A stretch of 64,000 bases of DNA from Isurus oxyrinchus. Lineage: Eukaryota. Positions 14,496 to 54,074 of this stretch are shown piece by piece. The stretch is from contig JANJGN010000150.1 of the NCBI GenBank assembly GCA_026770705.1, positions 310,001 to 374,000 of the forward strand. Direction: 5' to 3'. The stretch's first letter is position 1, and every line of letters begins with the position of its first letter. Position numbers and translations under genes: made by a program. A model generated the notes under the pieces. The model searched no databases. It saw only the letters and a program-made list of their open reading frames with translations, and had not been told where the DNA came from.

Positions 14496-14509
14496 GTAAG
14501 TATGGACAT

Positions 14510-17585: not shown

Positions 17586-17599
17586 GATTTTTTGCTTCT

Positions 17600-18147: not shown

Positions 18148-18435
18148 ATGCTCCAGATAAGCCAGTTATTGTGCTCCTGAAGGATTTACAGGAGGGGACT
18201 CCTGCACATATCATCTGTAAATGCCTCTACACCTGCCCTGATAACCACCTCAATCTAACCTGGAGTGAATTGCTGACTTCCTCGGTCAGCACCATCACAG
18301 AGAACGGTGGTGATGTTTCCGCTCTACTGACCTTTAACCCTTCGTTCAAGCATCATGGACGAACTCTCTGCTGTACGTGTGACTACTCTCAAACCAGCCA
18401 TCGAGTGGTCAACTCAGTTACTCTGAGTGTAAAGT
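18148..18435 (+). CDS. Siglec-like C2-set exon, unit A
   Basis: DAPDKPVIVLLKDLQEGTPAHIICKCLYTCPDNHLNLTW...HHGRTLCCTC; phase 1-1, 288 nt. Confidence 0.88.
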
Positions 18436-18943
18436 GTAAGTATTGGTTAGAACATCCTGCTTGTGATGGAGGGGGAGTCAGTCTCCTACTAAATCAGGCA
18501 TTGGAGAAGGTGCAAGTGGGATTGACAAGGATGATTCCAGAACTGAGAGGTTATAACTATCAGGAAAGACTGAACAAGCTGGGCTTCTTTTCTCTAGAAA
18601 AGAGAAGGCTGAGGGGGTGACCTGATCAAGGTCCTTAAAATAGTGAAAGGGTTTCGATAGGGTAGATGTGGAGAAGATGTCTCCACTTGTCGGAGTGACG
18701 AAGAGTTAGGGGCCATCAATATAAGATCATCACTAATAAAATGGTGCACACTGCAAACAATGTGCGTTCATGGTGGAGGGAGTGAATGTTGAAGATGGTG
18801 GGTGGGATGCCAATCAATCGGGCTGCGTTGTCCTGGATGGTGTCGAGCTTCTTGAGTGTTGTTGGAGCCGCACTCATCCCGGCAACTGGAGAGAATTCCA
18901 TCACACTCAGTGTTTAATGTGTTGATAATTTTGTATTTGAAAG

Positions 18944-19201
18944 ATTCTCCTCGCAACACGTCTGTCAGGCTGACACTGGAAAAAGGAAAGGTGATTTCTC
19001 TAAGTTGTTCCAGTGACGAGAATCCTGCGGTCCACAATTTCACCTGGTTTAAGATCTCCCAAGGAAAGGTGACGAATCTGGCGCTCGCTGGTCAAACTAT
19101 TACAGTTCCTTCTGGATTCGATGAGGAAATCTCCTACTACTGTGAAGCAACAAGTATCCTGGGCAGTTCCCAGTCTCTGCCCATTAGAATTCCCACTGAA
19201 T
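18944..19201 (+). CDS. CD22-like C2 Ig exon, unit A
   Basis: YSPRNTSV..LSCSSDENPAVHNFTWFK..YYCEATSILGSSQS; phase 1-1, 258 nt. Confidence 0.88.
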
Positions 19202-19706
19202 GTGAGTAATTTCAATCCTGACTTTTAAACAATTCCACATCTTGTCCAAACTCCGAGGTGAACCAAATCTCCCCTTGGGTGTTGCTGAAAACATGCTGTC
19301 GAAGGTTTCAGTCTCGTCAGGACAGAGTCACGAGAAAACCCAATCTCAAAGGGAACAGCCATTTCTGATGCGGGGGAAGAGGGCGTGCTGATTGGCTGGC
19401 AAGTCGACATTTCTCCACAGTTTGTTCACAATTCTCAGTGATGGTCACCATGAAACTACCAGATTGTTGTAAAAACCCTTCAGTACTGTCCCTCCAACAG
19501 TGCAGATCTCCCTCGCTACTGACTCTCTAATAGTGTAGCACCCTCTCAGTACTGACCTTCTGACATTGCAGGACTCCCTCAGGACTGAACTGAAGTGTCT
19601 GCCTGAATTAAGTTCTTTGTGGTGAAGGAACCTACATTGATATCACACCTTTCACATTCTCAGGGTCTCTCAAAGTGTTTCACAGTCAATGTAAGTAACT
19701 GATCAG

Positions 19707-25625: not shown

Positions 25626-26484
25626 GTAAGTGCTGTGTTATAATTACTCAACAATTCACATTCAACACTCAATGGGAAATAACACTAACTGTGACGTTTA
25701 CATATTAACACAAAACACAGCTTATTATAACACACTGTCTGATTCTCAATAACCTGGTGATAGCTTCCAGTTCAGTCCTAAAGCAACCTCTAATACTCAC
25801 TTTAATATCAATGATGAAAAGCATTAACTGTATTATCAGGTTATCCATTCCCATCAATCTCTCCTGTCCTGTTTAAAAGTCTGACGTATCGATAAAAGAA
25901 AGATGTGCATTTCTGCAGCGCAATTTACCACCTCAGGAGGATCCAAATCCCTTCACAGCCAATGAAATTATTCCTGAATTGTAGTCACAGATGTAAAACA
26001 CAGCAGGCAGTTTGTGCACAGCAAGATCCAACAAACCACAAGGTGATAAATCACCCAGATCACTGAGGAAATGAGAAGCCAGTGAACTCAAACCTCTGGT
26101 CTGATGAAGAGTCATACGGACTCGAAACGTTAACCCTGTCTTCCTCTCCACTGATACTGTCAGACCTGCTGAGTCTTTCCAGCAATTTTTGTTTTTGTTT
26201 CAGATTTCCAGCATCCGCAGTATTCTGCTTTTAACTCCAATCTCTGGTCTGAGCCTCTTCTCTCATCCAGTGTTCTCAATTCACATGTCTCGGAGTGAAC
26301 GTGTATTAAGCTGAGAGACAGAAACACTACTGCCAAAGAGCAAGAAAATCTTTCCTGATCATTGTAACCTCTCAGTTCTGATATCATCCTTGTAAAAGTG
26401 CTTTCTCTTGTGGGACTGTGGTTTCTATTTGAACTGATGCTTCATGTTATATTTCTCTAAAAGGATCCATTTTCTGTCTGTTAG

Positions 26485-26781
26485 ATTTCACAGATAAACC
26501 CACGATATTCCCTGCTGAAATTATTGCAGGAAAGCGTATGGATGTAAGCTGCACCTTCAACACAACGTGCAATGGAACAGCAGCACCTGTCTTAACCTGG
26601 GACACTCCCACTGACGTACCTGGATCAGTCTCAAACACTGTAACTCAGCATGGTGTCACTCTGACCTATACTTCTGTTCTGACCCTGATCCCATCACTCA
26701 AACACCACGGACACACTCTCAGCTGCAGAGTGAGATATCCATCTGTTTCATCGGAGCGGACCCTCGTACTAACTGTGCAAG
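26485..26781 (+). CDS. Siglec C2-set domain 2 exon, unit B
   Basis: Near-identical to 14199-14495, open, phase 1-1. Confidence 0.88.
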
Positions 26782-27103
26782 GTAATTACATACACTTTCA
26801 TTCTACATCAGCACTCCCTCAGCGCTGACCCTCTGACAGTGCAGCCCGTTCTCAGTATCCACATTCTAAGGCCTCTCTAAGTGCTTCAAAGTCGATAGAA
26901 GTTAATTGATCTTTATTTGATTATTGCTGAATGAAGAGACAAGCTGTCTAAACTTTACATCTCACACACACCATTCTCCATGGCAACACCTCCACCTATC
27001 AGAGACCACTTGTCAACCAATCAGCACTCTCTTCCCATTAAGTATAAATTGTTGTTCACTTTCTGTTGGTAATCCTGTGAACGGGCTTCTTGATTCCTGC
27101 CCT

Positions 27104-32544: not shown

Positions 32545-34500
32545 GGAAGGGGAGCCAATCAATCGGGCTGCTTTGTCCTGGATGGTGTCAAGCTTCTTGA
32601 GTGTTGTTGGAGCTGCACTCATCCAGGCATGTGGAGAGTATTCCATCACACTCCTGACTTGTGCGTTGTAGATGGTGGACAGGATTTGGGGAGTCAGGAG
32701 GTGAGTTACTGTCTGCAGGGTTCCCAGCCTCTGACCTGCTCTTGCAGCCACAGTGTTTACATGGCTGGTCCAGTTCAGTTTCTGCTCAATGGTAACTCCC
32801 AGGATGTTGATATTGGGGGATTCAGTGATGGTAATGCCATTGAATGCCAAGGGGCGATGGTTATGAATGGTCTGTGGGATATTCTGGTACAAAATGTCAA
32901 CACTCGGACTCCAGATGCAATATTCAAGTGGTTCCTTTATTAGGCATGTGGGGAGCAAACGCTGAGCAGTCCAGGCGCTTCTCCACCGAAGTTCAAATGA
33001 GCACAGTTTATATATTTTTTACTCTCAGTTACAAGGTAATGGTATTAGTTAGACAAAGGCCACAGCACAATGACCCTCCGGTGGGCTGATAATTGTGTTC
33101 TTGTACAGTAATTACAGGGCAGAGACTGGCTATTGTCCTTTTGAGACAGCAAAGAATCTATGTTTGTTCGATACAAAAGGTTTCCGGAGGCTGACTGGAT
33201 GTGGTTCAAGGCCATCGGACGGTGTGAAATAACCTTCCCCAATTCTTGATTGAGTCACCCTGTGTCCTTGTGTGTGTGTCTCCCATTTCCTCATTGCAAA
33301 TTTCCAGCTGAGCCCTCTGTACAGGTTTTTAGCTTTCACGTAAGGATGTGATTGTCTGTGTACGCTTTGTCACCCTAGCTGCTGGTCCTGGCTGGCTCTT
33401 TAAAATAAATCCAAATTTTCTGCGCCTTCAGTTAGATTCTCTCTTGTTGGAGTGGGCATTGCCTGGCACTTGTGTGGCATGAATGTTACTTGTCACCTGT
33501 CAGCCCAAGCCTGGATGTTGTCCAGGTCTTGCTGCATTTGGACATAACTTGCTTCAGTATCTGAGGAGCCATGAATGATGCTGAACATTGTGCAAACATC
33601 AGCAAACATCCCCACTTCTGACCTTATGATGGAAGGAAGGTCATTGATGAAGCAGTTGAAGATGTTTGAGCCTAGGACACTACCCTGAGTAACTCCTGCA
33701 GTGATGTCCTGGAACTGAGATGATTGACCCCCAATAATCACAACCATCGTCCTTTGTGCTGGGTATGACTCCAAGCAGCGGAGAGTTTTCCCCCGATTCC
33801 CATTGACTCCAGTTTTGCTCGGGCTCCTTGTTTTGCCACACTCAGTCAAATGCTGCCTTGATGTCAAGGGCAGTCACTCTCACCTCACCTCTGGAGTTCA
33901 GCTCATTTGTGCATGTTTGAACCAAGGCTGTAATGAGGCCAGGAGCTGAATGATCCTGGTGGAACACAAACTGAGCGTCAGTGAGCAGGTTCTTGGTAAG
34001 CACGTGCTGCTTGCAAGCGCTGTTGATGACCCCTTCCATCACTTTAGTAATGATCAAGAATAGACTGCTGGGGAATTGGCTGGGTTGGATTTGTCCTGCT
34101 TTTTGTGTACAGGACGTACCCCATAGCCGGGTAGTTGCCAGTGTTGCAGCTGTACTAGAAAATTCCAGAAAAGCTTGGCTAGGGGCGCAGCAAGTTCTGG
34201 AGCACAAGTCTTCAGTACTATTGCCGGAATAATGTCAGGGTCTGGAGCATTTGCAATATCCAGTGCCTTCAGCCCTTTCTTGATGTCACGTGGAATTAAT
34301 CGAATTGGCTAAAGATTGGCATCTCTGATGCTGGGGACCTCAGGAGGAGGCCGAGATGGATCAGCCACTCAGCACTTCTGGCTGAAGATTGTTGCGCATG
34401 CTTCAGTCTTGTCTTTTGCACCGATGTGCTGGGCTCCTCCATCATTGAGGATGGGGATATTTGTGGAGACTCCTCCTCCAGTGAGTTGTTTAATTGTCCA
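32545..34500 (-). mobile_element. CR1/L2-clade LINE RT fragments (32545-32850 and 33450-34500)
   Basis: GVTQGSVLG..FINDLP..MFADVCT and LGVTIEQKLNWTSHVN motifs. Confidence 0.85.
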
Positions 34501-36916: not shown

Positions 36917-37033
36917 CTAATATCTACAGCAGAGACCACAAGTCTCATTTGGTTCTCTCCAATTACAGCAGTTACAGCAGAATCTGCAGAGCTGCTGTCT
37001 GCCCATTCTCTTCTGGCGCTGCAGCAAGGAGCC
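36917..37033 (-). CDS. HAMP: Hepcidin exon 3 (RQKR site and mature peptide)
   Basis: cctcctgcttttccag/GGC TCC TTG CTG CAG CGC CAG AAG AGA ... TGC TGT AGA TAT TAG. Confidence 0.95.
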   Translation of the reverse strand, partial: GSLLQRQKRMGRQQLCRFCCNCCNWREPNETCGLCCRY

Positions 37034-40000
37034 CTGGAAAAGCAGGAGGACAATAGGTGAGAACATTCCGGAAAGAAAGAAGGCATCATTTCAATCAGGC
37101 GCGTCATTGGAAGGAGGATGGCGCATTTCTATAGCGCCTTTCCCCTCCTCAGGATGGGCCAAAGTGTTCCACAGCTGAAGGAAGGACTTTTTCTGAAGTG
37201 AGCTCACCGCTGTAATGTAGGAAACGCAGCAGGCAATTCACGCACAGCAAGATCCCACAAACAGAAATGTGATAATGGCCCCGATTTTCAGTTTTTTACC
37301 AATGTCAGTTGAGGGATAAATGTTTGCCCCAGGAAAGCGGACATAACTCCACCCCATCCAGCCCCCACCACCCCCTCCACACATACCCCCAACTCCTGAA
37401 ACACTTCATTTAAATTGTGGCCATGGAATCCTCTACATCCATCTGAGAGGGCAGATGTTGTCTCAGTTTAACATCTCATCTGAAGGACAGCGCCTTCAAC
37501 AGTGCAGCACCCCCTCAGTACTGACCCTCCGACTGTGCAGCACTCCCTCAGTACTGACCGTCTGACAATGCAGCACCCCCTCAGTACTGACCCTCCGACT
37601 GTGCAGTCCCCCGCTGGTACTGACCCTCTGACAGTGCAGCACTCCAAGACTGACCGTCTGACAATGCAGCACCCCCTCAGTACTGACCCTCCGACTGTCC
37701 TGCCCCCCCGCCGGTACTGACCCTCCGACAGCTCGGTAATTTCTCAATTACGCCTGGTGGTCCTTTTAACTCCGAGCTGAGAGTTGCAGAGAATCGAGCA
37801 GACACCCTGAACTGACACTTGCAGTGCAAGTACTGGGAGCGCGCTGGTCATTATCATGCTGCTGTCTGTGGGATCTTACTGTGCGCCAATGGCTGATTCT
37901 TTTCCCACAGTACATCAGTGACCTCACATGAAAGAAAAAAAGCACTTGATTGTCTGCGAAACAGTTTGGGACGTCCTGATGTGTTGGAAGGCGCTAGAGA
38001 AATGCAAGAGTTGACGTTTCGAGTCCTCATGACCCTTCTGAGGACTCGAAACGTCAACTCTTTTCTTCTCCGCCGATGCTGCCAGACCTGCTGAGTTTTT
38101 TCAGGTAATTCTGTTTTTGTTTTGGATTTCCAGCATCTGCAGTTTTCTTTGTTTTTATAGAGAAATGCAAGTCCTCTTTGTCTTTCACTCGATCCTCTAA
38201 GGTGTCTGTTGATTAACCAGCCTCTCGGTGTTTGATGTAGGCCTGGTTATAAACAGTTAGAAGGATCAAATATCAAAAGTGCTTTGGCTGACAGTCAAAC
38301 CGATTGTGCATTCGGAGAGATTAGATACGGTCTGCGCACAATGACTCCAGTCTCTGGCACTGACTGCCGCCTGGGGTCTCCCTTCCACATAACACTCACA
38401 ACTTGCATTTACACAGCGCCTCTGACATTGCAAAATCTCCCAGCCCACATTACCGGAGCGTAAATCAGAGAGAAGTCTAACACTGAGTCACATATGGAGA
38501 TATTAGGGATAGGTGACCAAAAGCTTGGTCAAAGATGTCAGTTTTTAAGGAGCGTCTTAAAGGAGAGAGAGAGAGAGAGGCAGAGAGGTTAAGGGAGGGT
38601 ATTCCGGAGCTCAGGGCCCCAGGCAGCTGAAGGCACGGCCACCAATGGTGGAGCGATGGGAATCAGGGGGACCCAGGAGATGCAGTAATGTCAGAGATTT
38701 TGGAGGAACATCGGGACCGGAGGAGGTGTTCTCCTGCTCCATATCTCTCTCTCTCTTCCTCTCATCCACTCCTCCTCTCCCTGTCTCTCTCACCTACTCT
38801 TCCTCTCAATTGCCCTCTCTCCCAATCTTTCTCTCCTCTCTCCCTTTTCCTGTCTCTCTCCCTCTCTCTCTCCCTGTCTCCTTCTCCCACTCTGTATCTC
38901 TCCCTCTCTCTCACACTATTTTTGTACCTTTCGCTCACTCTGTAACTCTCCCTTTCCTGTTAATTTCTCTCTCTTGGACAATCTCTCTTCCCTTTTCACT
39001 TTCCCTCACTCTGCATCTCTTCTTTAATTTCTCCCTCTGTCACTCTCTCCCACCTATGTTCTTTCCCTTTCACCCCTCCCCGTCCCACTCTCTGTCTCTC
39101 TCTTCCAATCCCTCCCTCCCCCATTCCATCCCTCTCTCCGACTCTCGACTCCCAGCCTCTCTTTAACCCACTCCCAGGCTGGATCAGTCTCCCTCTCACT
39201 ATTCCCGGCGTGGGTTACATTTAAAATTCCTGTGGGGATATGTTCACTTCCTTGGAATTGCCTCTTCCCAGCTTTGCAAAAAAAGGGGGGGGGGGGGGCT
39301 CGATTTCAAACCTGCCTCCTGAGTATAACCGAGACAGACTGCCACTGAAATCAGCTTGAAATCAGAAAACTTTCTGTGGAAGAAACGAGCAGGGAGAAAC
39401 CTTAAAATAAGGAATGAATTTCCACCTACCGTGTCCGGGGAATCCACAGATTTCTCAATCGTCGAAGAACCTAAAGCAGTGTCAACCTGCAAAAAGAAAG
39501 AATTTATCAGGGAGAAAGTGAGAGGAGGATTGAGGGAGAGGGAGAGAGAGAGAGAGAGGTACAGGAGAGAGAGGGGGAGGAGGACAGACTTGCATTTCTC
39601 TAACGCCTTTCACCACATCCCAAAGCATTTCACAGCCACTGAAGGATGTTTTTGAAGTGCACTCACACTGTAGGAAATGTGGCAGCTGATTTGTGCACAG
39701 CAAGATCCCACAAATAGCAATGTGATCATGGCCAAGATCATCTGTTTTTGGTGATGTTGGGTGAGGGATAAATATTGGTCCCAGGACACCGGGGAGAACT
39801 CCCCCTGCTCTTCCTCCAAATAGTGGCTGTGGGATCTTTCACACCCGACCGAGAGGGCAGACGGGGGACTCAGTTTAATGTCTCATTCAACATTGTTGTG
39901 CTCCCTCAGTACTAACCCTTTGACACTGCAGCACTCCCTCAGTACTAACCCTTCGATAGTGCTGCACTCCCACCCTATTGTCCCTCCGTCAGTGCAGCGC

Positions 40001-42664
40001 TCCCTCAGTACTGACCCTCCGACAGTGCAACACTTCCACAGTACTGACCCTGTAACAATGCAGCACTTCCTCAATACTGACCTCCGACAGTATAGCACTC
40101 ACTCAGTACTGTCCCTCCAATAGTGCAACACTTCCACACTACTGACCCTCTGACAGTGCAGCACTCCCTCAGCACGGAGTGTTGACCGACGTTATGGGAC
40201 TGAATTCCCTGGAGTGAGACTCAGACCAGAGATTTAGGTAGGGTTGTTCCGGCTGGAGGAGGTTACAGAGATAGGGAGGGTTGTAGAGGCTGTAGGAGGT
40301 AACAGAGATAGGGAGGATTCTAGAGGCTGTAGGAAGTTACAGAGATAGGGAGGGTTGTAGGGGCTGTAGGAGGTTACAGAGATAGGGAGGTGAGTAGGGG
40401 CTGTAGGAGGTTAAAGAGATGGGGGGGTTGTGGGGGCTGGAGGTGGTTACAGAGGTAGGGAGGGTTGTAGAGGCTGGAGGAGGTTACCAAAATAGATACT
40501 GTTGTAGGGGCCACAGTAGGTTACAGAGATAGGGAGAGTTATAGTGTGGAGAGGACGTTATAGAGTTCATGAGCATTGTAGGGGCTGGAGGAGGTTACAG
40601 TGATTCTGAGGGTCGTGGGGCCTGGAGGAGGTTACAGAGATAGGGAGGGTTGTAGGGTCTGGAGGAGGTTACAGAGATAGGGAGGGTTGTAGGGTCTGGA
40701 GCAGGTTACAGAGATAGGGAGGGTTGTAGGGTCTAGAGGAGGTTACAGTGATCATGAGGGTTGTGGGGTCTGGGGGAGGTTACAGAGATAGGTAGGGTTG
40801 TAGGGGCTGGAGGAGGTTACAGAGATAGGGAGGTTTATAGGGGCTGGAGGAGTTTACAGAGATAGGGAGGGTTGTAGGGGCTGGAGGAGGTTACGGAGAT
40901 AGGGAGTGTTGTAGGGGCTGGAGGAGGTAACAGAGATAGGGACAGTTGTAGGGGCTGGAGGAAGTTACAGAGATAGGGAGGGTTGTAGGGGCTGGAGGAG
41001 GTTACAGATATAGGGAGGGTTGTAGCGGCTGGAGAAGGTTACAGAGATAGGGAGGGGTGTAGGAGCTGGAGGAGGTTACAGAGATAGGGAGGGTTGTAAG
41101 GCCTGGTGGAGGTTACAGAGATAGGGAGGGGTGTAGGGGCTGGAGGAGGTTACAGAGATAGGGAGGGTTGTAGGGGCTGGAGGAGGTTACAGATATAGGG
41201 AGGGTTGTAGGGTCTGGAGCAGGTTACAGAGATAGGGAGGGTTGTAGGGTCTAGAGGAGGTTACAGTGATCATGAGGGTTGTGGGGTCTGGGGGAGGTTA
41301 CAGAGATAGGTAGGGTTGTAGGGGCTGGAGGAGGTTACAGAGATAGGGAGGTTTATAGAGGCTGTAGGAGGTAACAGAGATAGGGAGGATTCTAGAGGCT
41401 GTAGGAGGTTACAGAGATAGGGAGGGTTGTAGGGGCTGTAGGAGGTTACAGAGATAGGGAGGTGAGTAGGGGCTGTAGGAGGTTAAAGAGATGGGGGGGT
41501 TGTGGGGGCTGGAGGTGCTTTCAGAGGTAGGGAGGGTTGTAGAGGCTGGAGGAGGTTACCAAAATAGATACTGTTGTAGGGGCCACAGTAGGTTACAGAG
41601 ATAGGGAGAGTTATAGTGTGGAGAGGACGTTATAGAGTTCATGAGCATTGTAGGGGCTGGAGGAGGTTACAGTGATTCTGAGGGTCGTGGGGCCTGGAGG
41701 AGGTTACAGAGATAGGGAGGGTTGTAGGGTCTGGAGGAGGTTACAGAGATAGGGAGGGTTGTAGGGTCTGGAGCAGGTTACAGAGATAGGGAGGGTTGTA
41801 GGGTCTAGAGGAGGTTACAGTGATCATGAGGGTTGTGGGGTCTGGGGGAGGTTACAGAGATAGGTAGGGTTGTAGGGGCTGGAGGAGGTTACAGAGATAG
41901 GGAGGTTTATAGGGGCTGGAGGAGTTTACAGAGATAGGGAGGGTTGTAGGGGCTGGAGGAGGTTACGGAGATAGGGAGTGTTGTAGGGGCTGGAGGAGGT
42001 AACAGAGATAGGGACAGTTGTAGGGGCTGGAGGAAGTTACAGAGATAGGGAGGGTTGTAGGGGCTGGAGGAGGTTACAGATATAGGGAGGGTTGTAGCGG
42101 CTGGAGAAGGTTACAGAGATAGGGAGGGGTGTAGGAGCTGGAGGAGGTTACAGAGATAGGGAGGGTTGTAAGGCCTGGTGGAGGTTACAGAGATAGGGAG
42201 GGGTGTAGGGGCTGGAGGAGGTTACAGAGATAGGGAGGGTTGTAGGGGCTGGAGGAGGTTACAGATATAGGGAGGGTTGTAGCGGCTGGAGGAGGTTACA
42301 GAGATAGGGAGGGGTGTAGGGGCTGGAGGAGGTTACAGAGATAGGGAGGGTTGTAAGGCCTGGTGGAGGTTACAGAGATAGGGAGTGGCTGAGGAGGGAT
42401 TAAAAACAAGAATGAGAATTTCAGGGGAAACGACAGAAGGAAATGATGTTAAATTCATAGAGGGCGACAATATTAAAGGCACGAACATAATAATATCAAA
42501 CTGCGGAAGTGACCAGTCTATCTGGGTGGTAGACGTAGAGTCATGTGCAAGAAACACCTCACCCAGAGGGACATCTCTTAGCTTACCCTCGACAAGGAGA
42601 AGAAGTGACTCAGCTGCAGGGAGAGCAGCAAAGTCAGAGTGAACAAGACAAGTCGCCATTTCAT
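36917..42664 (-). CDS. HAMP: Hepcidin-like prepropeptide gene, 3 exons: join(42664..42587, 39486..39430, 37033..36917), 83 aa
   Basis: MKWRLVLFTLTLLLSLQLSHFFSLSR/VDTALGSSTIEKSVDSPDT/GSLLQRQKR-MGRQQLCRFCCNCCNWREPNETCGLCCRY*. Signal peptide, prodomain, furin site, 8-Cys hepcidin pattern, canonical GT-AG phase-0 introns. Confidence 0.92.
39430..39486 (-). CDS. HAMP: Hepcidin exon 2 (prodomain)
   Basis: ttctttctttttgcag/ 57 nt /gtaggt, phase 0-0. Confidence 0.8.
40240..42390. repeat. G-rich 37-bp minisatellite (ggttacagagatagggagggttgtaggggctggagga) in hepcidin intron 1, with a ~1.07-kb higher-order duplication
   Basis: Variant block at 40291 recurs at 41363; inverted copies at 43128-43240. Confidence 0.95.
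42587..42664 (-). CDS. HAMP: Hepcidin exon 1 (signal peptide)
   Basis: ATG AAA TGG CGA CTT GTC TTG TTC...TCG AGG/gtaagc; hydrophobic leader. Confidence 0.88.
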
Positions 42665-42750
42665 CTGGGAGCTTCCCATCTCTGCCTGTCTCTTCTGATC
42701 TTCTGGCTCTGCTTTGATGCTTTGGTTTGTAACTAGAGGAGCTTCCTGCT

Positions 42751-42965
42751 CTTATACCTGAAACACTTGAAGGGGACAGCTGCGGGTGGGTAGCTGTGTG
42801 GTATCACACCCATTTCTGGATATTGCAGTGTCGATGTTCCCTGTCCCACTGGCCTGGGACCAGCAGTAAGGTCACTGGGACATTGACTGTCTGGCGCCGA
42901 GAACTATCAGTCCCTCCGCAACGCCCTTCACCTTGTGCAAATATGTGTTCATATTGACGCAACAC
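42751..42965 (-). promoter_or_regulatory. Putative hepcidin promoter
   Basis: TATAAG (42756-42751); GGCGCC BMP-RE-like at 42893-42898 next to a GTCT/AGAC Smad element; TTGTGCAA (42933-42940) and TGACGCAA (42955-42962) C/EBP-type sites. Confidence 0.6.
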
Positions 42966-44290: not shown

Positions 44291-45327
44291 TCCTCCAGTG
44301 AAACATTTCAGAGCAGCTGAGCTTGGTTTTCTGGAACCAGTCTCGGCCCAGAAGACTAGGGCCCTCACCTGTCGCTATGATCACTGGAAGCTGGGCTGTC
44401 TGCTGCCTGTAGGACACAGGTACTGGGATGAGGTCCTTTCCCTGTATGGATTCTCCAGTGTGTGTCTTCAGCTGATCCACTGTTGGCTCTAAATTCAGCG
44501 TCTGGGTTCCTTCATTTAGCTGCTTAAATGTGGGCTCTTCCACCACTGTGTCTGAGGCTCCCGTATCTGCCCCATTACTAGTGGCTGCCCATTCACTTGG
44601 GTTGTGATGGTTATAGGTTCAGTTTTTACCACTGTGACATTGGACAGGGAATAGACATCGGTATCAGCAGCTTCAGGCACTGCCTGATGGGCTGTCTCGA
44701 TTACACCCTGCATTGCTTTATTACCCGCCCCTTTCTTGTGGCAGTGATGGCATTCTGCCCCCTTGAACCTGCAGGTGTCCGGTACGTGCTCACTCCCCCC
44801 CACATCGAGAACAGGCCAACTTCGGAGTTGCTGCTGAAATACTCCCACGAAGCCTTTTAGTTTCTGGAGCGGCAGAGACTGTCTCTTGCTTGGCGGCTGT
44901 CTCTCTCTCTCTCTCTCTCTCTCCAGTTTGAACCTCACGCCCGGTGATTGGTTCCTGTCCCAGCTGAGGACTGGTGCCATGTTGTACATCCCTTAAATCC
45001 CGCCAGTCTCTCCCAGCACTTTCCATGCCTGGCGCTATTTCCATGGTGCGCTTCAAATCGATGTCGGCTTCTGCGAGTAAATGGCTCTGAATGGCGTTGG
45101 GGTGAACGACACAAACCAATCGGCCCCGCAACATGTCATTGAGTGTGTCTCCGAGGTCCCAGTGCTCAGTCACCTGCTTCCACTTCACTGTATAGGTTGC
45201 GATGGACTCTCCCGGGGCCCTTACTCTGGAGTTAAACTTAAACCTTTTCATTATTACCCACGGCTTCAGCTGAAAACACATCTTCATGAGGTCGACTAAT
45301 TGGTGAAAAGATTTAGAATTGGGTGCA
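44290..45327 (-). mobile_element. Gypsy/Ty3 LTR retrotransposon gag-protease fragment, degraded
   Basis: RFKFNSRVRAPGESIATY..LNDMLRGRLVC (gag), CSRCGG/CHHCHKKG knuckles, GEGPSLLGRDW protease end. Confidence 0.88.
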
Positions 45328-45614
45328 ATACACGTCACTGTCTTCAGCTCTGAGACTGTCAATCCTCACCAAACAATTCTTCCCTTCCAAGTCGGCGATT
45401 ATTTTAGCACGTCCCACGAATGTGGCCACCCCATAATTGGGATCTTTGGTGTATGTGATGATATATTTCCATCTATACCAATATTTGTACCAAGCTCCGT
45501 GCAGTGCTGTGTAAGAGTGGGAAGGAAAGTCAAAGCTACACGGAATAACCACACAAGAGCTGCTGATGGCCCTCCGAGGTAGCGCCTTCATAGACCATCC
45601 CTCTGACGTCACTC
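45328..45614 (-). pseudogene. Siglec V-set exon (unit C), truncated by the Gypsy element just before the essential Arg
   Basis: ctttcag/ GVTSEGWSMKALPRRAISSSCVVIPCSFDFP..W..GRAKIIADLEGKNCLVRIDSLRAEDSDVY, then gag sequence. Confidence 0.88.
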
Positions 45615-45669
45615 CTGAAAGGCAACAAGGGAGGGGACTGAACATCAAAAAGCAGAATATTACTTCAAT

Positions 45670-46120
45670 GGAGAGAGGCAGCAGAATGCGGTACAGAGGG
45701 ATCTGGGTGTCCTTGTACATGAATCACAGAAAGTCAGCATTCAGGAACAGCACGGAATGAGGAAGGCAAGTGGAATGTTGGCCTTTATTGCAAAGGGATG
45801 GAGTATAAAAGGAGGGAAGTCTTGCTACAACTGTACAGGGCGTTGGTGAGATTGTATCAGGAGCAGTGTGTACAGTTCTGGTCTCCTTACTTAGGGAGGG
45901 ATAGACTCTGCATTGGAGGCAGTTCAGAGGAGGTTCACTGGGCTGATTCCTGGGATGAAGGGGGTTTGTCTTATGAGGAAATGTTGAGCAGGTTGGGCCC
46001 TGTATCCATTGGAGTTTAGAAGAATGAGAGGTGATCTTATTGAAACATATAAGATTCTGAGGTGGTGGGGGGTTTGACAGGGTCGATGCTGAGGGGATGT
46101 TACCCCTTGTGGGGGAATCC
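45670..46120 (+). mobile_element. CR1 LINE fragment
   Basis: EYKRREVLLQLYRALVR..CVQFWSPY. Confidence 0.85.
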
Positions 46121-46480: not shown

Positions 46481-46749
46481 CTTCAGTTCCTCATCTAAAT
46501 GGAAATGATAAAGACAGAGACTTTTTCAGAAATTGTCCCCAGCGTTTCTTCCTCAAACAACAACTTGTGTTTAAATGGCACCTTTCAGAAAATTAAACAG
46601 CCCCAGGGAATTATCTAATGTCAAGACAAGGAAGGAGAGATTGAGAAGGGACATCGCAAACCGATTCACCAAACACGGCAAAAATTCATTGTTCCCTCAC
46701 TCCCTGTGCTGGGTGTCCAGCTTTTTCTCTCAGTGAGTTTAGTCCTCAC

Positions 46750-49620
46750 AATCTCTCTCTATCGCACTCTTCTGCTCTCTCTCTCTCTCACACACACACA
46801 TTCTCTCTCTAACACTCACAATCTCTCTCTATCACACTCTTCTGCTCTATCTCTCTCTCTCACACACACACATTCTCTGTCTAACACTCACAATCTCTCT
46901 CTATCGCACTCCTCTGCACGATCTCTCTCTCACACACACACATTCTCTCTCTAACACTCACAATCTCTCTCTATCAACTCTTCTGCTCTATCTCTCTCTC
47001 TCTCTCTCTCACACACATTCTCTCTCTAACACTCACAATCTCTCTCTATCACACTCTTCTGCTCTATCTCTCTCTCTCTCACACACACACATTCTCTCTC
47101 TAACAAACACAATCTCTCTCTATCGCACTCTTCTGCTCTCTCTCTCTCTCACACACACACACATTCTCTCTCTAACACTCACAATCTCTCTCTATCACAC
47201 TCTTCTGCTCTCTCTCTCTCTCTCACACATACATTCTCTCTCTTATACTCACAAAATTTTTCTCTGTCACACTCTTCTGCTCTATCTCTCTGTCACACAC
47301 ACACATTCTCTCTCTAACACTCACAATCTCTCTCTATCACACTCCTCTGCTCTATCTCTCTCTCACACACACATTCTCTCTCTAACACTCACAATCTCTC
47401 TCTATCGCACTCTTCTGCTCTATCTCTCTCTCTCAAACACACTCATTCTCTCTCTAACACTCACAATCTCTCTCTATCGCACTCTTCTGCTCTATCTCTC
47501 TCTCTCACACACACACACATTCTCTCTCTAACAAACACAATCTCTCTCTATCACACTCTTCTGCTCTATCTCTCTCTCTCTCACACACACATTCTCTCTC
47601 TAACAATCACAATCTCTCTATCACACTCTTCTGCTCTATCTCTCTCTCACACACACACATTCTCTCTCTAACACTCACAATCTCTCTCTATCGCACTCTT
47701 CTGCTCTATCTCTCTCTCTCACACACACACATTCTCTGTCTAACACTCACAATCTCTCTCTATCGCACTCCTCTGCTCGATCTCTCTCTCACACACACAC
47801 ATTCTCTCTCTAACACTCACAATCTCTCTCTATCAACTCTTCTGCTCTATCTCTCTCTCTCTCTCTCTCTCACACACATTCTCTCTCTAACACTCACAAT
47901 CTCTCTCTATCACACTCTTCTGCTCTATCTCTCTCTCTCTCACACACACATTCTCTCTCTAACACTCACAATCTCTCTCTATCACACTCTTCTGCTCTAT
48001 CTCTCTCTCGCACACACACACATTCTCTCTCTAACAAACACAATCTCTCTCTATCGCACTCTTCTGCTCTCTCTCTCTCTCACACACACACACATTCTCT
48101 CTCTAACACTCACAATCTCTCTCTATCGCACTCTTCTGCTCTATCTCTCTCTCTCACACACACACATTCTCTGTCTAACACTCACAATCTCTCTCTATCG
48201 CACTCCTCTGCTCGATCTCTCTCTCACACACACACATTCTCTCTCTAACACTCACAATCTCTCTCTATCACACTCTTCTGCTCTATCTCTCTCTCTCACA
48301 CACATATTCTCTGTCTAACACTCACAATCTCTCTCTATCACACTCTTCTGCTCTATCTCTCTCTCACACACACACCCACATTCTCTCTCTAACACTCACA
48401 ATCTCTCTCTATCACACTCTTCTGCTCTATCTCTCTCTCACGCACACACATTCTCTCTCAGACACTCACATTCTCTCTCTCTCACACACACACATTCTCT
48501 CTCTCTCAGACACTCACATTCTCTCTCTCTCAAACATTTACCATCTCTCTCTATCTTTCTCTTCTGCTGTCTCCCTCTTTCTCACTCTCATGCACTCTCT
48601 CCCNNNNNNNNNNNNNNNNNNNNNNNNNNNNNNNNNNNNNNNNNNNNNNNNNNNNNNNNNNNNNNNNNNNNNNNNNNNNNNNNNNNNNNNNNNNNNNNNN
48701 NNNNNNNNNNNNNNNNNNNNNNNNNNNNNNNNNNNNNNNNNNNNNNNNNNNNNNNNNNNNNNNNNNNNNNNNNNNNNNNNNNNNNNNNNNNNNNNNNNNN
48801 NNNNNNNNNNNNNNNNNNNNNNCTCCCTCACACCACACCCTCCCTCACACACACACGCACTCTCNNNNNNNNNNNNNNNNNNNNNNNNNNNNNNNNNNNN
48901 NNNNNNNNNNNNNNNNNNNNNNNNNNNNNNNNNNNNNNNNNNNNNNNNNNNNNNNNNNNNNNNNNNNNNNNNNNNNNNNNNNNNNNNNNNNNNNNNNNNN
49001 NNNNNNNNNNNNNNNNNNNNNNNNNNNNNNNNNNNNNNNNNCTCCCTCACACACACACACTCTCCCTCACACACACACACTCTCTCCCTCACACACAGAA
49101 TCTCTCTCACACACACACACTCTCCCTCACACACACATCCTCCCTCACACACACACACACTCTCTCTGATACGCACAATCTCTCCCTCACACACACACAC
49201 TCTCCCTCACAGACACACACACTCTCTCTGATACGCACAATCTCTCCCTCACACACACAGAATCTCTCTCACACACACACACTCTCCCTCACACACACAT
49301 CCTCCCTCACACACACACACACTCTCTCTGATACGCACAATCTCTCCCTCACACACACACACAATCTCCCTCACACACACAGAATCTCTCTCACACACAC
49401 ACTCTCTCCCNNNNNNNNNNNNNNNNNNNNNNNNNNNNNNNNNNNNNNNNNNNNNNNNNNNNNNNNNNNNNNNNNNNNNNNNNNNNNNNNNNNNNNNNNN
49501 NNNNNNNNNNNNNNNNNNNNNNNNNNNNNNNNNNNNNNGTACACACTCTTTCTAACTCTTTTTCTCTCTCACAGACTCTCTCTGTCTCTCTCTGTCTCTC
49601 TCTCTCTCAGACACACTCTC
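46750..49620. repeat. Compound (CT)n/(CA)n ~60-bp satellite with N gaps
   Basis: cattctctctctaacactcacaatctctctctatcacactcttctgctc units. Confidence 0.95.
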
Positions 49621-50097
49621 TCTAATACGGAAGATTGTGGTTTTAAGACGTGCTCATGATTTCTGCTCAAAACCCAGGCAGATTCTCCCCAGTGAGGGAG
49701 TACTGAGGGTGTGCTGCACTGTCAGAGGGTCAGTACTGAGGGAGTGCTGCACTGTTGGAGGGTTAGCACTGAGGGAGTGCTGCACTTCCAGAGGGTCAAT
49801 ACTGAAGGAGTGCTGCACTCTCAAAGCGTCAATGCTGAGGGAGTGCTGCACTGTCAGAGGGTGGACACTGAGGGAATGCTGCTCTGTCAGACCTGCCATA
49901 TTTCAGATGATGTTTGAAATTAGCAACATGCCTCATGTATAATTATATATCATCAACTCAAAATAAATAGATTATTCCTGTACATTTCACTTTACTGTAA
50001 ATTGTTTGCAGTTTCATTTCCTTAGAAACCAGGCTTGTGTGATCACTATTTTTAAATAACGTTAATAATAAAGATGCGACAATCCACATGCACAGAT

Positions 50098-50135
<38 letters not shown>

Positions 50136-50838
50136 ATGTGTAGGCACATACATGCACATTTACACACAGTCATACACGTGCAAAAACCTACACAGAAACA
50201 TACACACACTCAACTCACACACACACACTCACACGTGCACACACATACACATACACATGTACACACATTCACTTATGCACAGAAATATACACAAAGACAC
50301 ACGCACATTTGCGCAAACACATACACACATGCACACACAGACACATGCATGCATACTCACACAAACATACTCACATATGTAGAAACACAAACACATACAC
50401 ATAAACACGCGTGAGGTCCCTCTTCTCTCTCAGGGCTACACTGGAGTCTCGGTGTCAGCTCCGATTCTGTGTTGAAGGAAGGTAAACTCCAGATCAACAA
50501 GACCCTGAACTGGATGAGCAACCTCCTGAACAGAGAATTGTAGATTTACCCCTCAGTGCTCCATCGATCAAATACAATTCATTCCCGTAAATCCCTTGGC
50601 AAAATCCTGAGGATGTGAAAGTTTCTTTCATTCTAGGTGAACAGCACCTCTACTGGTGGGAGAATGTAACTGTAGTTTGACTGTTTACATAGGCAGTGTC
50701 CATTATAAATTTGACAGTGGAAGTTATATGGAGGGAAGGTATCTGGAAATGCATACAGACATCAGATACAGAGAGATGATGCATGGAGTCTTGCTGTGCA
50801 CGCTGCTTGCTCACATTAAACACTTGATTTGTTCTTAG

Positions 50839-51120
50839 ATGCTCCACAGAATCTCACATTTACTTCTCTTGAAATGATTAATGCTTCATTGATCAATATA
50901 ATTGAGGGGAATTCTGCAGTGATAATCTGCTCTGTCGAGAGCTTCCCAGCTTCTAACCTGACGTGGCGACATCTTAATGTCCCAATGAACAGAACAAGTT
51001 GCAACAATGAGCTGTGGTTGGTGATTCCTCACGTTACATCCAGGGACACTGGAGACTATCAGTGTGTGGCAGAGAATGAACATGGAGCAGTGGAGGGATT
51101 CATCACCATCACTGTGGAAT
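50839..51120 (+). CDS. C2 Ig exon D1
   Basis: APQNLTFTSLEM..EGNSAVIICSVESFPASNLTWRH..DTGDYQCVAENEHG; 282 nt, phase 1-1. Confidence 0.88.
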
Positions 51121-51876
51121 GTGAGTGTACACAGACTTCAACATCTCTCACACACACACTCACACATGCAAAAACACTCATGTGTAGACACAAACATGCA
51201 CGCTTACACACAAACATACGTTCAAACACATACACAGAAACACACACAAACTCAACTCACACATACAAACATTCATGCGCACACAAAGACACACACATGC
51301 ACACACACTCCCTCAAGCACAGACATACAGACATACACACACAGACACACACACACACACACACACACACACGCGTCCACACATGTGCTGACAGACACGC
51401 GCATACACACAAATACAAACTCACGTGCAGAAGTACACACACAAGTGTGAGCTCCCTCTCCTCTCTCAGTTCTGTACTGGAGTCTTGGTATCAGCTCCCA
51501 TTCTGTGCTGAAGGAAGGTAAACTCCAGATCAGCAAGACCCTGAATTGGATGAGCAACCTCCTGAACAGAGAAATGTAGATTTAGCTCTCAGTGCTCCAT
51601 CGATCAAATACAATTCATTGCCTATCAAGCCCTTGGGGACATCTTGAGAGTGTTAAAGGATGTTTCTTTCATTCTAGAGGGTTAGCAACTCTACTGGTGG
51701 GAGGAAGCAACTGCAGTGTGACAGTTTACATAGGAAGTGTCCATTATAAATATGACAGTAATTTTTCATGAGGGAAGGTACCTGGAAAAGCATTCCAACA
51801 TCAGATACAGAGAGATGATGCATGGAGTCTTGCTGTGCACTATGCTTGCTCACATTAAAATCTTTATTTCTTTTAG

Positions 51877-52157
51877 ACGCCCCCAGAATCTCTCAATTAA
51901 TTCTCTTGATATGATTAACGCTTCATCGATCAATATAATTGAGGGGAATTCTGCAGTGATAATCTGCTCTGTCGAGAGCTTCCCAGCTTCTAACCTGACG
52001 TGGCGACATCTTAATGTCCCAATGAACAGAACAAGTTGCAACAATGAGCTGTGGTTGGTGTTTCCTCACGTTACATCCAGGGACACTGGAGACTATCAGT
52101 GTGTGGCAGAGAATGAACATGGAGCAGTGGAGGTGTCCATAACCATCACTGCGGAAC
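51877..52157 (+). pseudogene. C2 Ig exon D2 with a 1-nt deletion
   Basis: 281 nt versus 282; ACGCCCCCAGAAT is one base shorter than ATGCTCCACAGAAT in D1. Confidence 0.75.
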
Positions 52158-52982
52158 GTGAGTTGNNNNNNNNNNNNNNNNNNNNNNNNNNNNNNNNNNN
52201 NNNNNNNNNNNNNNNNNNNNNNNNNNNNNNNNNNNNNNNNNNNNNNNNNNNNNNNNNNNNNNNNNNNNNNNNNNNNNNNNNNNNNNNNNNNNNNNNNNNN
52301 NNNNNNACACATGCATAATTATCCACACACAGTCATACACATACAAGCATATACACAGGAAAATACACACCCTTCTCAAACACACACACACATTCATGCC
52401 CACACATAGACACACACATGCACATACTCTCACTCATGGACAGACCTAGACACACAGACACATGCGCATGCGCACACACAGACACATGTGTGCATACACA
52501 CACAAACACACTCACATGTGCAGAAACACAAACACACAGATACACACACGTGAGTTCCCTCTCCTCTCTCAGTGCCGCACTGGAGTCTTGGTATCAGCTC
52601 CGATTCTGTGTTGAAAGAAGGTAAACTCCAGATCAACAAGACCCTGAATTGGATGAGCAACCTCCTGAACAGAGAATTGTAGATTTACCCCTCAGTGCTC
52701 CATCAATCAAATACAATTCATTGCCTGTCCAGCCCTTTGCGAAATCCTGAGGATGTGAAAGCAAGCTTCTTTCATTCTAGATGGACAACACCTCTACTGG
52801 TGGGAGAATGCAACTGCAGTGTGACAGTTTACATAGGCAGTGTCCATTAAAAATGTGGCATAAGACGTTATTCTGAGGGAAGTTACCTGGAAATGCATTT
52901 AGACATCAGATACAGAGAGATGATGCATGGAGTCTTGCTGTGCAATAGGTTTGCTCACATTAAACACTTGATTTGTTTTTAG

Positions 52983-53264
52983 ATGCACCACAGGATCTCT
53001 CATTTACTTCGCTTAATATGATTTACGCTTCATCAATCAATATAATTGAGGGGAATTCTGCAGTGATAATCTGCTCTGTCGAGAGCTTCCCAGCTTCTAA
53101 CCTGACGTGGCGACATCTTAATGTCCCAATGAACAGAACAAGTTCCAACAATGAGCTGTGGTTGGTGATTCCTCACGTTACATCCAGGGACACTGGAGAC
53201 TATCAGTGTGTGGCAGAGAATGAACATGGAGCAGTGGAGGGGTTCATAACCATCACTGTGGAAT
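52983..53264 (+). CDS. C2 Ig exon D3
   Basis: 282 nt, phase 1-1, open. Confidence 0.88.
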
Positions 53265-54074
53265 GTGAGTGTGGAGATACATTTGTTTGTTTGTTGTCTC
53301 CGTGGTCTCCGTGGAGCCATTGGGATCGTGTTGTTTTTAATCCAGTTTTCTTCAATCCTCGCTCAGTCCACGTTATCCACACATCCAATTTTTCCTCTCC
53401 CTTTCTGTTTTTGCTCTCAGTTTCTCCTTCAATGGTTGTGAGGACAAGGCTGTCAGGTCTTCGTTTCCAATCTCCATACTTGACGACCTTTCGCTCTCTA
53501 ACTGTCCTGAACAACCCTTTTAATTGCTGAACTTCTCATTCTTTAATTGATAAATATTATATATAAATGTTACATGTTGAAATGCAACTATTGTATTCAT
53601 AAATTGCTTAGAAATTACTAAACATTCAACAGCCAGTGAAGCATTATCGAAGTGAGCTCACTGTTGTAATGTAGGAAACACAGGTACTGATTTGTGCACA
53701 GCAAGATCCCGCAAACCACCGTGTGATAATGACCTGATAGTCGATTATTTCAGTGAGGTTGGTTGCTACATGTGTAGAGACTACATACCCTTTAGGGAGG
53801 GAAGCATGTCTCGATGTGGATGTGACTCCAGTCTCAGACACCAACATGGTTAACTCACACCTGCCCTCTGAACTGGTCTCCCAGTTTGGGACAAACCAGT
53901 GGTTCAGGAGGAAGACCCCCCACCACCTTCTCAAGGGGAAACTAGGGATGGACAATAAATGTCAGCATTGCCCGAGAATGAGTATTTAAACACTGAGTGA
54001 GTGTATCGCTTCTCGAGATACATCGGAGCATCATTGTAAACCTGTAGTGCAGTAATTAATGGCTGTTTTTACAG

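What the first reader, a model, noticed from the sequence alone, without database searches (positions are those of the whole stretch)
36920..37006. Atypical mature hepcidin: doubled loop, N-glycan sequon, no ATCUN/ferroportin N-terminus
Seen: MGRQQLCRFCCNCCNWREPNETCGLCCRY (29 aa). Cys spacing is C-x2-CC-x-CC-x8-C-x2-CC versus x4 in human hepcidin-25, and the loop contains N-E-T. The positions of His3/Phe4 (DTHFP, needed for ferroportin activity) are Arg/Gln; Phe9 is kept. Inference: a divergent, perhaps antimicrobial (HAMP2-like) or neofunctionalised paralog, implying a conventional copy may exist elsewhere.
Basis: partly seen in the sequence, partly recalled or inferred. Interest (0 to 1): 0.85.

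Follow-up and report, generated by a model that had tools for sequence, protein, structure and literature searches.

The report
Diverged shark hepcidin gene copy
This is a real, spliced and heavily transcribed shark gene of the hepcidin family (small cysteine-rich iron and defence peptides); its long loop is normal for sharks, but its tip that normally grips the iron exporter has been rewritten, so it is probably a side copy and not the iron hormone.

Summary
The minus strand 37006..36920 encodes MGRQQLCRFCCNCCNWREPNETCGLCCRY, then TAG, directly after a furin site RQKR. It is the last exon of an intact three-exon gene (31 + 19 + 38 codons). Transcript contigs show both GT..AG introns at very high depth, and Pfam Hepcidin scores above its cut-off.

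The reading is partly right.
- **Loop:** the "doubled loop" is not a peculiarity of this copy. A public basking-shark protein (XP_078389754.1, unnamed by NCBI) has the same 29-residue layout and the same 8-residue loop, with a conventional His3 start (MSHLSVC).
- **What is special here:** the N-terminus (R3/Q4), a loop that went from +4 to -1 charge, and the N-E-T sequon. A sequon sits at nearly the same place in sea-bass Hamp2.
- **A conventional copy exists:** the signal and pro regions are about 88% identical to the basking-shark protein, but only 4 of 21 non-Cys mature residues match. The same animal also transcribes a form reading x-SHLSICMYCC.

The most likely reading is a shark-specific, hamp2-like diversified paralogue. 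Its function is untested. This scan had already reported near-identical copies on several other pieces of this genome. I found no paper on elasmobranch hepcidins. Interest is moderate.

The parts
42751..42756 (-). TATA-like box (TATAAG), about 30 bp upstream of the furthest 5' end seen in a transcript contig
   Evidence: Motif scan; sequence read; X4 contig reaches 42723 with 0 differences (table 8, record 16)
42680..42723 (-). 5' untranslated part of exon 1 (minimum extent)
   Evidence: X4 contig record 16 lies on 42585-42723 with no differences
42587..42679 (-). Exon 1 coding part, 31 codons: MGSSQMKWRLVLFTLTLLLSLQLSHFFSLSR (signal peptide), followed by GTAAGC donor
   Evidence: joint 39486|42587 in 11 contigs of X1 and 1 of X4 (table 5); 29/31 identical to Cetorhinus P0003
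39487..42586 (-). Intron 1 (GT..AG), holds tandem ~1.07-kb repeats and other repeats
   Evidence: Joint 'skips 3100, CT..AC (cut +2)'; repeated ORFs 1072 bases apart
39430..39486 (-). Exon 2, 19 codons: VDTALGSSTIEKSVDSPDT (pro-region), phase 0 on both sides
   Evidence: both joints; 16/19 identical to P0003
37034..39429 (-). Intron 2 (GT..AG)
   Evidence: Joint 'skips 2396, CT..AC (cut +1)', 8 contigs in X1 and 1 in X4
38088..38242 (-). Minor alternative cassette exon inside intron 2: 155 nt, so it breaks the frame; made of a highly transcribed repeat
   Evidence: Joints 37033|38088 and 38242|39430, one contig each in X1; AG and GT flanks read
36917..37033 (-). Exon 3 coding part: GSLLQRQKR plus the mature peptide plus TAG
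   Evidence: Pfam Hepcidin
37007..37018 (-). Furin-type cleavage site RQKR
   Evidence: REKR at the same place in P0003
36920..37006 (-). Predicted 29-residue mature peptide with 8 Cys
36941..36964 (-). 8-residue hairpin loop NWREPNET, with sequon N-E-T at 36949-36941
   Evidence: P0003 has NKKGTKKT at the same columns

Best explanation
Shown: an intact three-exon hepcidin-family gene lies on the minus strand (exon 1 42679-42587, exon 2 39486-39430, exon 3 37033-36917). It is correctly spliced and very abundantly transcribed. It sits among Siglec-like receptor exons. It encodes an 88-codon prepropeptide: a signal peptide, a short pro-region, the furin site RQKR and a 29-residue 8-Cys peptide.

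Shown: its prepro-region is about 88% identical to a basking-shark hepcidin that has a conventional His3 N-terminus and the same 8-residue loop. The non-Cys residues of the mature peptide have been almost wholly replaced. The same animal also transcribes a conventional x-SHLSIC form.

Inferred: after a duplication within sharks, the mature peptide of this copy type diversified quickly, as in teleost hamp2 and other defence-peptide families with a conserved prepro-region. Having lost His3 and the hydrophobic residue 4 within the nine N-terminal residues that carry ferroportin activity, it is probably not the iron hormone. It is secreted, cut by furin, and folds into a disulfide-locked hairpin. 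It then serves host defence or another function not mediated by ferroportin, while the conventional paralogue controls ferroportin.
For: - **Gene model and expression:** searches give GT..AG joints in runs X1 and X4 of the same organism and one joint in X5 of a related organism. Summed contig depth over exon 3 in X1 is above 600,000.
- **Family:** Pfam Hepcidin above its cut-off; core CRFCCNCC...CGLCCRY aligns with bass hepcidin 1S6W.
- **Conserved prepro, rewritten mature part:** exon 1 is 29/31 identical to Cetorhinus XP_078389754.1, exon 2 16/19, the pro part of exon 3 7/9. The mature peptide matches at only M1, N15, T22 and G24 besides the 8 Cys.
- **Conventional paralogue in the same animal:** one X1 contig fits the window down to 37004, then differs at 12 of 30 bases. 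All 7 non-Cys codons are changed and the 3 Cys codons are identical. It reads SHLSICMYCC (table 7; compared by eye).
- **Role of the N-terminus:** hepcidin's effect on ferroportin is recapitulated by its first nine residues, which insert into the transporter cavity (bioRxiv 10.1101/2020.03.16.993006). The loop is 'highly variable' and extracellular (PMC8235187).
- **Precedent:** sea-bass Hamp1 (QSHLSLC...) but not Hamp2 (HSSPGGC...) regulates ferroportin (PMC5665920).
Against: - No function was tested.
- Leu6, Cys7 and Phe9 of the ferroportin-binding stretch are kept, and the length of the N-terminus is kept. Shark ferroportin could have co-evolved.
- The promoter carries a GGCGCC plus CAGAC motif like the BMP-responsive element of HAMP. 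That would fit iron regulation.
- Net charge is only about +1.4 at pH 7 (+2 by residue count), lower than the conventional shark peptide (+5 by residue count). This does not favour a classical cationic antimicrobial action.
- The conventional paralogue in this animal rests on one contig with 30 readable bases.
- Several near-identical copies or alleles are transcribed: 36835 T>G in 83% of the depth, and junction variants at 39431 and 39485. Expression therefore cannot be assigned to this copy alone.
Confidence: 0.6

Rival explanations
1. It is still a working ferroportin ligand: a second iron hormone or the main one. Shark ferroportin tolerates Arg3/Gln4, and the many copies simply raise the dose.
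For: Leu6-Cys7-x-Phe9, the 6-residue N-terminal length and the aromatic C-terminus are kept. Transcript abundance is very high, as expected of liver hepcidin. A BMP-RE-like GGCGCC+CAGAC lies at -219 from the ATG and no STAT-type TTCNNNGAA was found in 620 bp. The loop is extracellular and variable in the ferroportin complex (PMC8235187).
Against: His3 and a hydrophobic residue 4 are kept from human (DTHFPIC; from my own knowledge) through sea-bass Hamp1 (QSHLSLC) to basking shark (MSHLSVC), and are lost here. All seven non-Cys codons at the N-terminus differ from the conventional paralogue of the same animal. That pattern is not purifying selection on a receptor-binding tip.
Confidence: 0.23
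2. This copy is a redundant or decaying member of a recently amplified block. The transcripts come mostly from sister copies and the peptide has no function of its own.
For: Most 3'UTR depth in X1 (83%), and all of it in X4, carries G at 36835 where the window has T. The deepest junction contig carries a base change at 39431 (Thr to Met in the last codon of exon 2). Earlier notes of this scan describe damaged sister copies on other pieces (unchecked). A frame-breaking repeat-derived exon is sometimes included.
Against: All three exons, both splice-site pairs, the furin site, all 8 Cys and the stop are intact. About 17% of a very large depth carries the window's own T at 36835. No variant inside the coding exons was among the listed differences.
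Confidence: 0.1
3. It is a neofunctionalised ligand for another target, for example the second cartilaginous-fish ferroportin that lacks the Cys326 thiol, possibly carrying an N-glycan on the loop.
For: Some cartilaginous fish have a second ferroportin gene with another residue at position 326 (PMC8235187). This peptide type is highly expressed and has a rewritten N-terminus and loop with an N-E-T sequon.
Against: This is pure inference: no ferroportin sequence of this animal was at hand. The sequon lies 9 residues from the C-terminus in a tightly disulfide-bonded peptide. A similar N-M-S is present in bass hepcidin, which from memory was purified without a glycan.
Confidence: 0.05

Closest known systems
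Cetorhinus maximus (basking shark) XP_078389754.1, 'uncharacterized protein LOC144671611 isoform X2' (P0003), a hepcidin by Pfam
   Same: 88 residues, with pieces of 31/19/38 residues matching the three exons here. Signal and pro regions about 88% identical. R-x-K-R then Met. 29-residue mature peptide with C-x2-CC-x-CC-x8-C-x2-CC, so the same 8-residue loop that begins with N and ends with T.
   Different: P0003 starts MSHLSVCVY (His3, Leu4) and has a strongly basic loop NKKGTKKT with no sequon, net +5 by residue count. The window has MGRQQLCRF, loop NWREPNET with N-E-T, net +2 by residue count. Only 4 of 21 non-Cys mature residues are shared.
Teleost hamp2-type hepcidin (sea bass Hamp2 HSSPGGCRFCCNCCPNMSGCGVCCRF; hybrid striped bass hepcidin, PDB 1S6W)
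   Same: No His3/hydrophobic-4 N-terminus. Identical core CRFCCNCC and a similar tail CG[VL]CCR[FY]. P-N-x-S/T sequon at almost the same place in the loop. Coexists with a conventional type-1 hepcidin, and multi-copy families occur (PMC5665920; PMC6240063 by title).
   Different: Not an orthologue. The prepro-region is about 88% identical to a conventional shark hepcidin, which points to a duplication within sharks. The loop has 8 residues against 5. The antimicrobial and non-ferroportin role is shown for sea bass and not tested here.
Human hepcidin-25 (HAMP) and teleost hamp1 (QSHLSLCRWCCNCCRGNKGCGFCCKF)
   Same: Three-exon prepropeptide, furin cut, 8-Cys hairpin framework, six residues before the first Cys, Phe9 or another aromatic at 9, and a gene beside Siglec-family genes (HAMP lies next to MAG and CD22 in human, from my own knowledge; Siglec-like exons shown here).
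   Different: His3 to Arg, Phe/Leu4 to Gln. The loop has 8 residues instead of 4-5. No x-x-His (ATCUN) metal site.

Membership tests
Hepcidin family (Pfam PF06446) | Profile match above the curated cut-off | tested here: met
   32 bits against a cut-off of 27, E 1.5e-7, profile positions 23-52 of 53
Hepcidin family (Pfam PF06446) | Eight-Cys framework C-x2-CC-x-CC-xn-C-x2-CC at the C-terminus of the precursor | tested here: met
   Cys at 7, 10, 11, 13, 14, 23, 26, 27 of the 29-mer; stop two codons after the last Cys
Hepcidin family (Pfam PF06446) | Three-exon gene: signal peptide, pro-region, and R-x-K/R-R cut directly before the mature peptide | tested here: met
   Spliced contigs define exons of 31, 19 and 38 codons, phase 0; RQKR
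Hepcidin family (Pfam PF06446) | Disulfide-locked beta-hairpin fold | tested here: inconclusive
   AlphaFold2 on a two-row alignment gave mean pLDDT 57.5 with helices, which is not usable; no fold search was made
Hepcidin family (Pfam PF06446) | Abundant, mainly hepatic transcript | tested here: inconclusive
   Very high contig depth in run X1, far lower in X4 of the same sample record. Tissues are not on record, and depth of contigs is a poor measure.
Iron-hormone hepcidin (HAMP / hamp1 type) | N-terminus x-[ST]-H-[FL]-[PS]-[ILV]-C within the nine residues that carry ferroportin activity | tested here: not met
   M-G-R-Q-Q-L-C-R-F: His3 and hydrophobic 4 are lost; Leu6, Cys7 and Phe9 are kept. 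Compare MSHLSVC and QSHLSLC. Role of the first nine residues.
Iron-hormone hepcidin (HAMP / hamp1 type) | Binds ferroportin and causes its occlusion or degradation | not testable with these tools
Iron-hormone hepcidin (HAMP / hamp1 type) | BMP/SMAD-responsive promoter | tested here: inconclusive
   GGCGCC at 42898-42893 joined to CAGAC, 219 bp before the ATG. A six-base motif alone proves nothing.
Teleost hamp2-type (antimicrobial) hepcidin | Descent from the teleost hamp2 duplication | tested here: not met
   The prepro-region is about 88% identical to a conventional shark hepcidin, which points to a duplication inside the shark lineage. No tree was built.
Teleost hamp2-type (antimicrobial) hepcidin | Type-2 sequence traits: no His3 start, CRFCCNCC core, P-N-x-S/T in the loop | tested here: met
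   Alignment with 1S6W and with the Hamp2 peptide printed in PMC5665920
Teleost hamp2-type (antimicrobial) hepcidin | Antimicrobial activity, induced by infection and not by iron | not testable with these tools
   Needs MIC assays and challenge experiments

The most novel reading that the evidence does not exclude
Lamniform sharks carry an amplified, massively expressed class of His-less, near-neutral hepcidins. These may be N-glycosylated on the loop. They may have a receptor of their own, for instance the second cartilaginous-fish ferroportin that lacks the Cys326 thiol, or they may act as a competitor of the conventional hormone. That would make two hepcidin-ferroportin pairs at the base of jawed vertebrates.
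Probability: 0.07. Interest if true: 0.8.

Novelty: new member of a known kind. Interest (0 to 1): 0.38.

Why it matters
Hepcidin and the hepcidin-binding cysteine of ferroportin are thought to appear together in early jawed vertebrates (PMC8235187). Yet I found no paper that describes an elasmobranch hepcidin, and NCBI labels the basking-shark gene 'uncharacterized'.

Three things follow from this window:
- Shark hepcidins have a 29-residue design with an 8-residue loop.
- Sharks, like perch-like teleosts, hold both a conventional form and a rewritten form behind one conserved prepro-region.
- The split into hormone and side copies is therefore recurrent in vertebrates.

This gives a pair of natural peptides with which to test which residues shark ferroportin reads. 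The finding is not a new kind of molecule, and this scan had already met sister copies elsewhere in this genome.

Tried and rejected
- **The search for homologous proteins with exon 3:** once as the 49-codon ORF and once as a 57-codon open frame with region 18-57. No candidate shared three words. Only the open frame holding exon 1 reached the two Cetorhinus proteins.
- **The search of protein representatives with exon 3:** one hit, P0001, a 577-residue repeat protein that is not a hepcidin. I treat it as spurious.
- **ESM Atlas:** best score 0.76 to a plant hypothetical protein, no lead.
- **PDB by sequence:** only bass hepcidin 1S6W, at E 0.26. Useful as an alignment, not as statistics.
- **AlphaFold2 of the exon-3 peptide:** pLDDT 57.5, helical, unusable. 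No fold search followed.
- **The look-up of encoding contigs for the Cetorhinus locus:** I could not read the neighbours or the DNA of P0003, so I made no dN/dS and no copy count in that genome.
- **Nurse-shark plasma proteome paper:** it names hepcidin among detected proteins, but the held supplement has no such entry. PMC3225996 is not held.
- **Poly(A) signal:** no AATAAA, ATTAAA or AGTAAA in 617 bases after the stop. The 3' end is left undefined.
- **Rejected, sequon as a novelty:** a sequon lies at nearly the same place in bass Hamp2.
- **Rejected, loop length as a novelty:** the conventional basking-shark peptide has the same length.
- **Operators' rules:** the joined 88-residue model was never assembled for, or sent to, any search. 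Exons were searched apart, by reference.

Full report
**Observation.**
- The minus strand of 36920-37006 translates to MGRQQLCRFCCNCCNWREPNETCGLCCRY.
- A TAG stop follows at 36919-36917. The frame upstream reads ...GSLLQRQKR, so a furin-type site RQKR (37018-37007) ends directly before the Met.
- Cysteines lie at residues 7, 10, 11, 13, 14, 23, 26 and 27. The loop between the fifth and sixth is NWREPNET, with N-E-T at 36949-36941.
- It is the only CC-x-CC motif in the six frames of the window.
- Pfam Hepcidin (PF06446) scores 32 bits against a gathering score of 27.

**Gene model.**
- I laid the contigs of four public runs on window:36800-42790 (5,991 letters). They gave two joints with GT..AG ends on the minus strand:
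  - 37033|39430: 8 contigs in X1 and 1 in X4.
  - 39486|42587: 11 contigs in X1 and 1 in X4.
- Exon 1 codes MGSSQMKWRLVLFTLTLLLSLQLSHFFSLSR (42679-42587), followed by GTAAGC.
- Exon 2 codes VDTALGSSTIEKSVDSPDT (39486-39430).
- Exon 3 starts at 37033 behind ...ttttccag.
- All introns are phase 0, and the precursor has 31 + 19 + 38 codons.
- A TATAAG lies at 42756-42751. One contig reaches 42723 without a difference, so the start of transcription is about 30 bp behind the TATA box.
- I never joined them for a search.

**Expression.**
- In X1 the summed contig depth over exon 3 exceeds 600,000, and even intron pieces were assembled. In X4, filed under the same sample, depth is in the hundreds.
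- The records do not state that these runs are RNA. The spliced joints show that they hold transcripts.
- Expression cannot be pinned on this copy alone:
  - At 36835 in the 3'UTR, 83% of the X1 depth and all of X4 read G where the window has T.
  - The deepest junction contig has a change at 39431 (ACG to ATG, Thr to Met, last codon of exon 2).
  - A minor contig has a change at 39485 (GTT to GGT, Val to Gly).
  - So several near-identical copies or alleles are transcribed.
- X5, from a related organism, shows the intron-2 joint, and an exon-1 piece with 5 differences in 94 letters.
- A minor form includes a 155-nt repeat-derived exon (38242-38088) that breaks the frame.

**Relatives.**
- Searches with exon 3 found nothing usable.
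- The open frame that holds exon 1 found two NCBI proteins of the basking shark Cetorhinus maximus, LOC144671611.
- XP_078389754.1 (P0003, 88 aa, Pfam Hepcidin, called 'uncharacterized') matches piece by piece:

| Part | Identity to P0003 |
|---|---|
| Exon 1 | 29/31 |
| Exon 2 | 16/19 |
| Pro part of exon 3 | GSLLQRQKR vs GSLLLREKR (7/9) |

- Its mature peptide is MSHLSVCVYCCGCCNKKGTKKTCGYCCKL. It also has 29 residues and an 8-residue loop, but with His3/Leu4, a very basic loop and no sequon.
- Outside the eight Cys, only M1, N15, T22 and G24 are shared with the window, i.e. 4 of 21.
- Hence the long loop is the normal shark design, not a mark of this copy. Earlier notes of this scan had said so; I tested it here.
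- The other isoform (P0002) splices exons 1-2 onto a reverse-transcriptase fragment. A close match to that fragment lies downstream of the gene in this window, at 34234-33845 on the minus strand.

**A conventional form in the same animal.**
- In X1 one contig fits the window from 37004 upward, i.e. the pro-region side. Below 37004 it carries 38 unlike letters, of which 30 are printed (table 7).
- Read on the minus strand in the gene's frame, they give S-H-L-S-I-C-M-Y-C-C directly after the codon at 37006-37004. That is x-S-H-L-S-I-C, the conventional N-terminus.
- Compared by eye with the window, 12 of the 30 bases differ. All seven non-Cys codons are changed, each to another amino acid. The three Cys codons are identical.
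- So identity ends abruptly at the start of the mature peptide. This is the pattern of defence-peptide families with a conserved prepro-region and a fast-changing mature part. It could also come from gene conversion of the prepro-region.
- This rests on one contig.

**What the differences mean.**
- Hepcidin binds ferroportin with its disulfide-rich part facing outward and the N-terminus deep in the cavity, and the first nine residues suffice for its activity (bioRxiv 10.1101/2020.03.16.993006).
- The loop is described as highly variable and largely extracellular (PMC8235187). The 8-residue loop should therefore matter little.
- Loss of His3 and of the hydrophobic residue 4 is the relevant change. 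Leu6, Cys7 and Phe9 remain.
- In sea bass, Hamp1 (QSHLSLC...) lowers ferroportin and Hamp2 (HSSPGGC...) does not (PMC5665920).
- The window's core CRFCCNCC and tail CGLCCRY are closest to Hamp2 and PDB 1S6W, which also carry N-M-S where the window has N-E-T. So the sequon is not unprecedented.
- From memory, bass hepcidin was purified unglycosylated. The site lies 9 residues from the C-terminus. Glycosylation is possible but doubtful.
- By residue count the net charge is +2 (about +1.4 at pH 7, pI 8.2), against +5 for the basking-shark peptide. A classical cationic antimicrobial action is therefore not favoured by charge.

**Surroundings.**
- The flanking exons are Siglec-like:
  - a V-set exon with the YFFRIE arginine motif at 13408-13878 (Pfam V-set and Ig_CD22; best PDB matches Siglec-5, -7, -8, MAG, CD33);
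  - C2-set exons at 14147 and 26433;
  - a V-set exon on the minus strand at 45316-45723 (sialoadhesin, MAG);
  - Ig exons at 50820 and 52964.
- In human, HAMP lies beside MAG and CD22 (my own knowledge), so the linkage looks old.
- The promoter holds GGCGCC joined to CAGAC at 42898-42889, like a BMP-responsive element. No TTCNNNGAA was found in 620 bp. This is only a motif match.

**Verdict.**
- The sequence feature is real and belongs to a real, expressed gene.
- It is a member of the hepcidin family on every feature I could test.
- It fails the N-terminal signature of the iron-hormone type.
- It resembles teleost hamp2 in traits but not in descent.
- Best reading (0.6): a shark-lineage paralogue whose mature peptide diversified, and which probably no longer acts as the ferroportin hormone.
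- Rivals: still a ferroportin ligand (0.23), a redundant copy (0.1), a ligand of a new target (0.05).
- No paper on elasmobranch hepcidin sequences turned up.
- The scan had already reported sister copies on several other pieces of this genome, and one about 10 kb beyond this window.

Noticed in passing
window 13408-19206 (+), 26433-26825 (+), 45316-45723 (-), 50820-51200 (+), 52964-53344 (+): Siglec-like receptor exons on both sides of the hepcidin gene. They include a V-set exon with the sialic-acid arginine motif (YFFRIE), C2-set exons duplicated at 14147 and 26433, and two near-identical Ig exons at 50820 and 52964. Best PDB matches are Siglec-5/7/8, MAG, CD33 and sialoadhesin.
   Followed up: partly
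window 42889-42898 (-), 219 bp before the ATG: GGCGCC directly joined to CAGAC in the promoter, like the BMP/SMAD-responsive element of mammalian HAMP. No STAT-type TTCNNNGAA in 620 bp upstream. Only a motif match.
   Followed up: partly
window 38088-38242 (-): A 155-nt repeat-derived cassette exon inside intron 2 is included in a minority of contigs and breaks the reading frame. The same repeat is very deeply covered in all four runs.
   Followed up: partly
window 33845-34234 (-); P0002 (Cetorhinus XP_078389755.1): The basking-shark isoform X3 joins hepcidin exons 1-2 to a reverse-transcriptase fragment (DHSAPDLITALVQSCTNELNSRGEVRV...). A near-identical RT fragment lies about 2.7 kb downstream of the hepcidin stop in this window. 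The same read-on splicing may occur here, but it was outside the stretch laid.
   Followed up: no
window 36835, 39431, 39485: Transcript variants in run X1: 3'UTR T>G in 83% of depth; ACG>ATG (Thr>Met) in the last codon of exon 2 in the deepest junction contig, also seen in X5; GTT>GGT (Val>Gly) in the first codon of exon 2. Several near-identical copies or alleles are expressed.
   Followed up: partly
window about 40390-42270 (intron 1): ORF fragments recur at a spacing of exactly 1072 bases (for example 40390/41462, 40569/41641, 40761/41833), so intron 1 holds a tandem duplication of about 1.07 kb made of repeat-like sequence.
   Followed up: no
window 46619-48315 (+) and 50043-52621: Long low-complexity runs that translate as (SLSHTHT)n-like and (THTH)n-like strings, interrupted by several runs of N. 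Probably microsatellite or minisatellite DNA between the Siglec-like exons.
   Followed up: no
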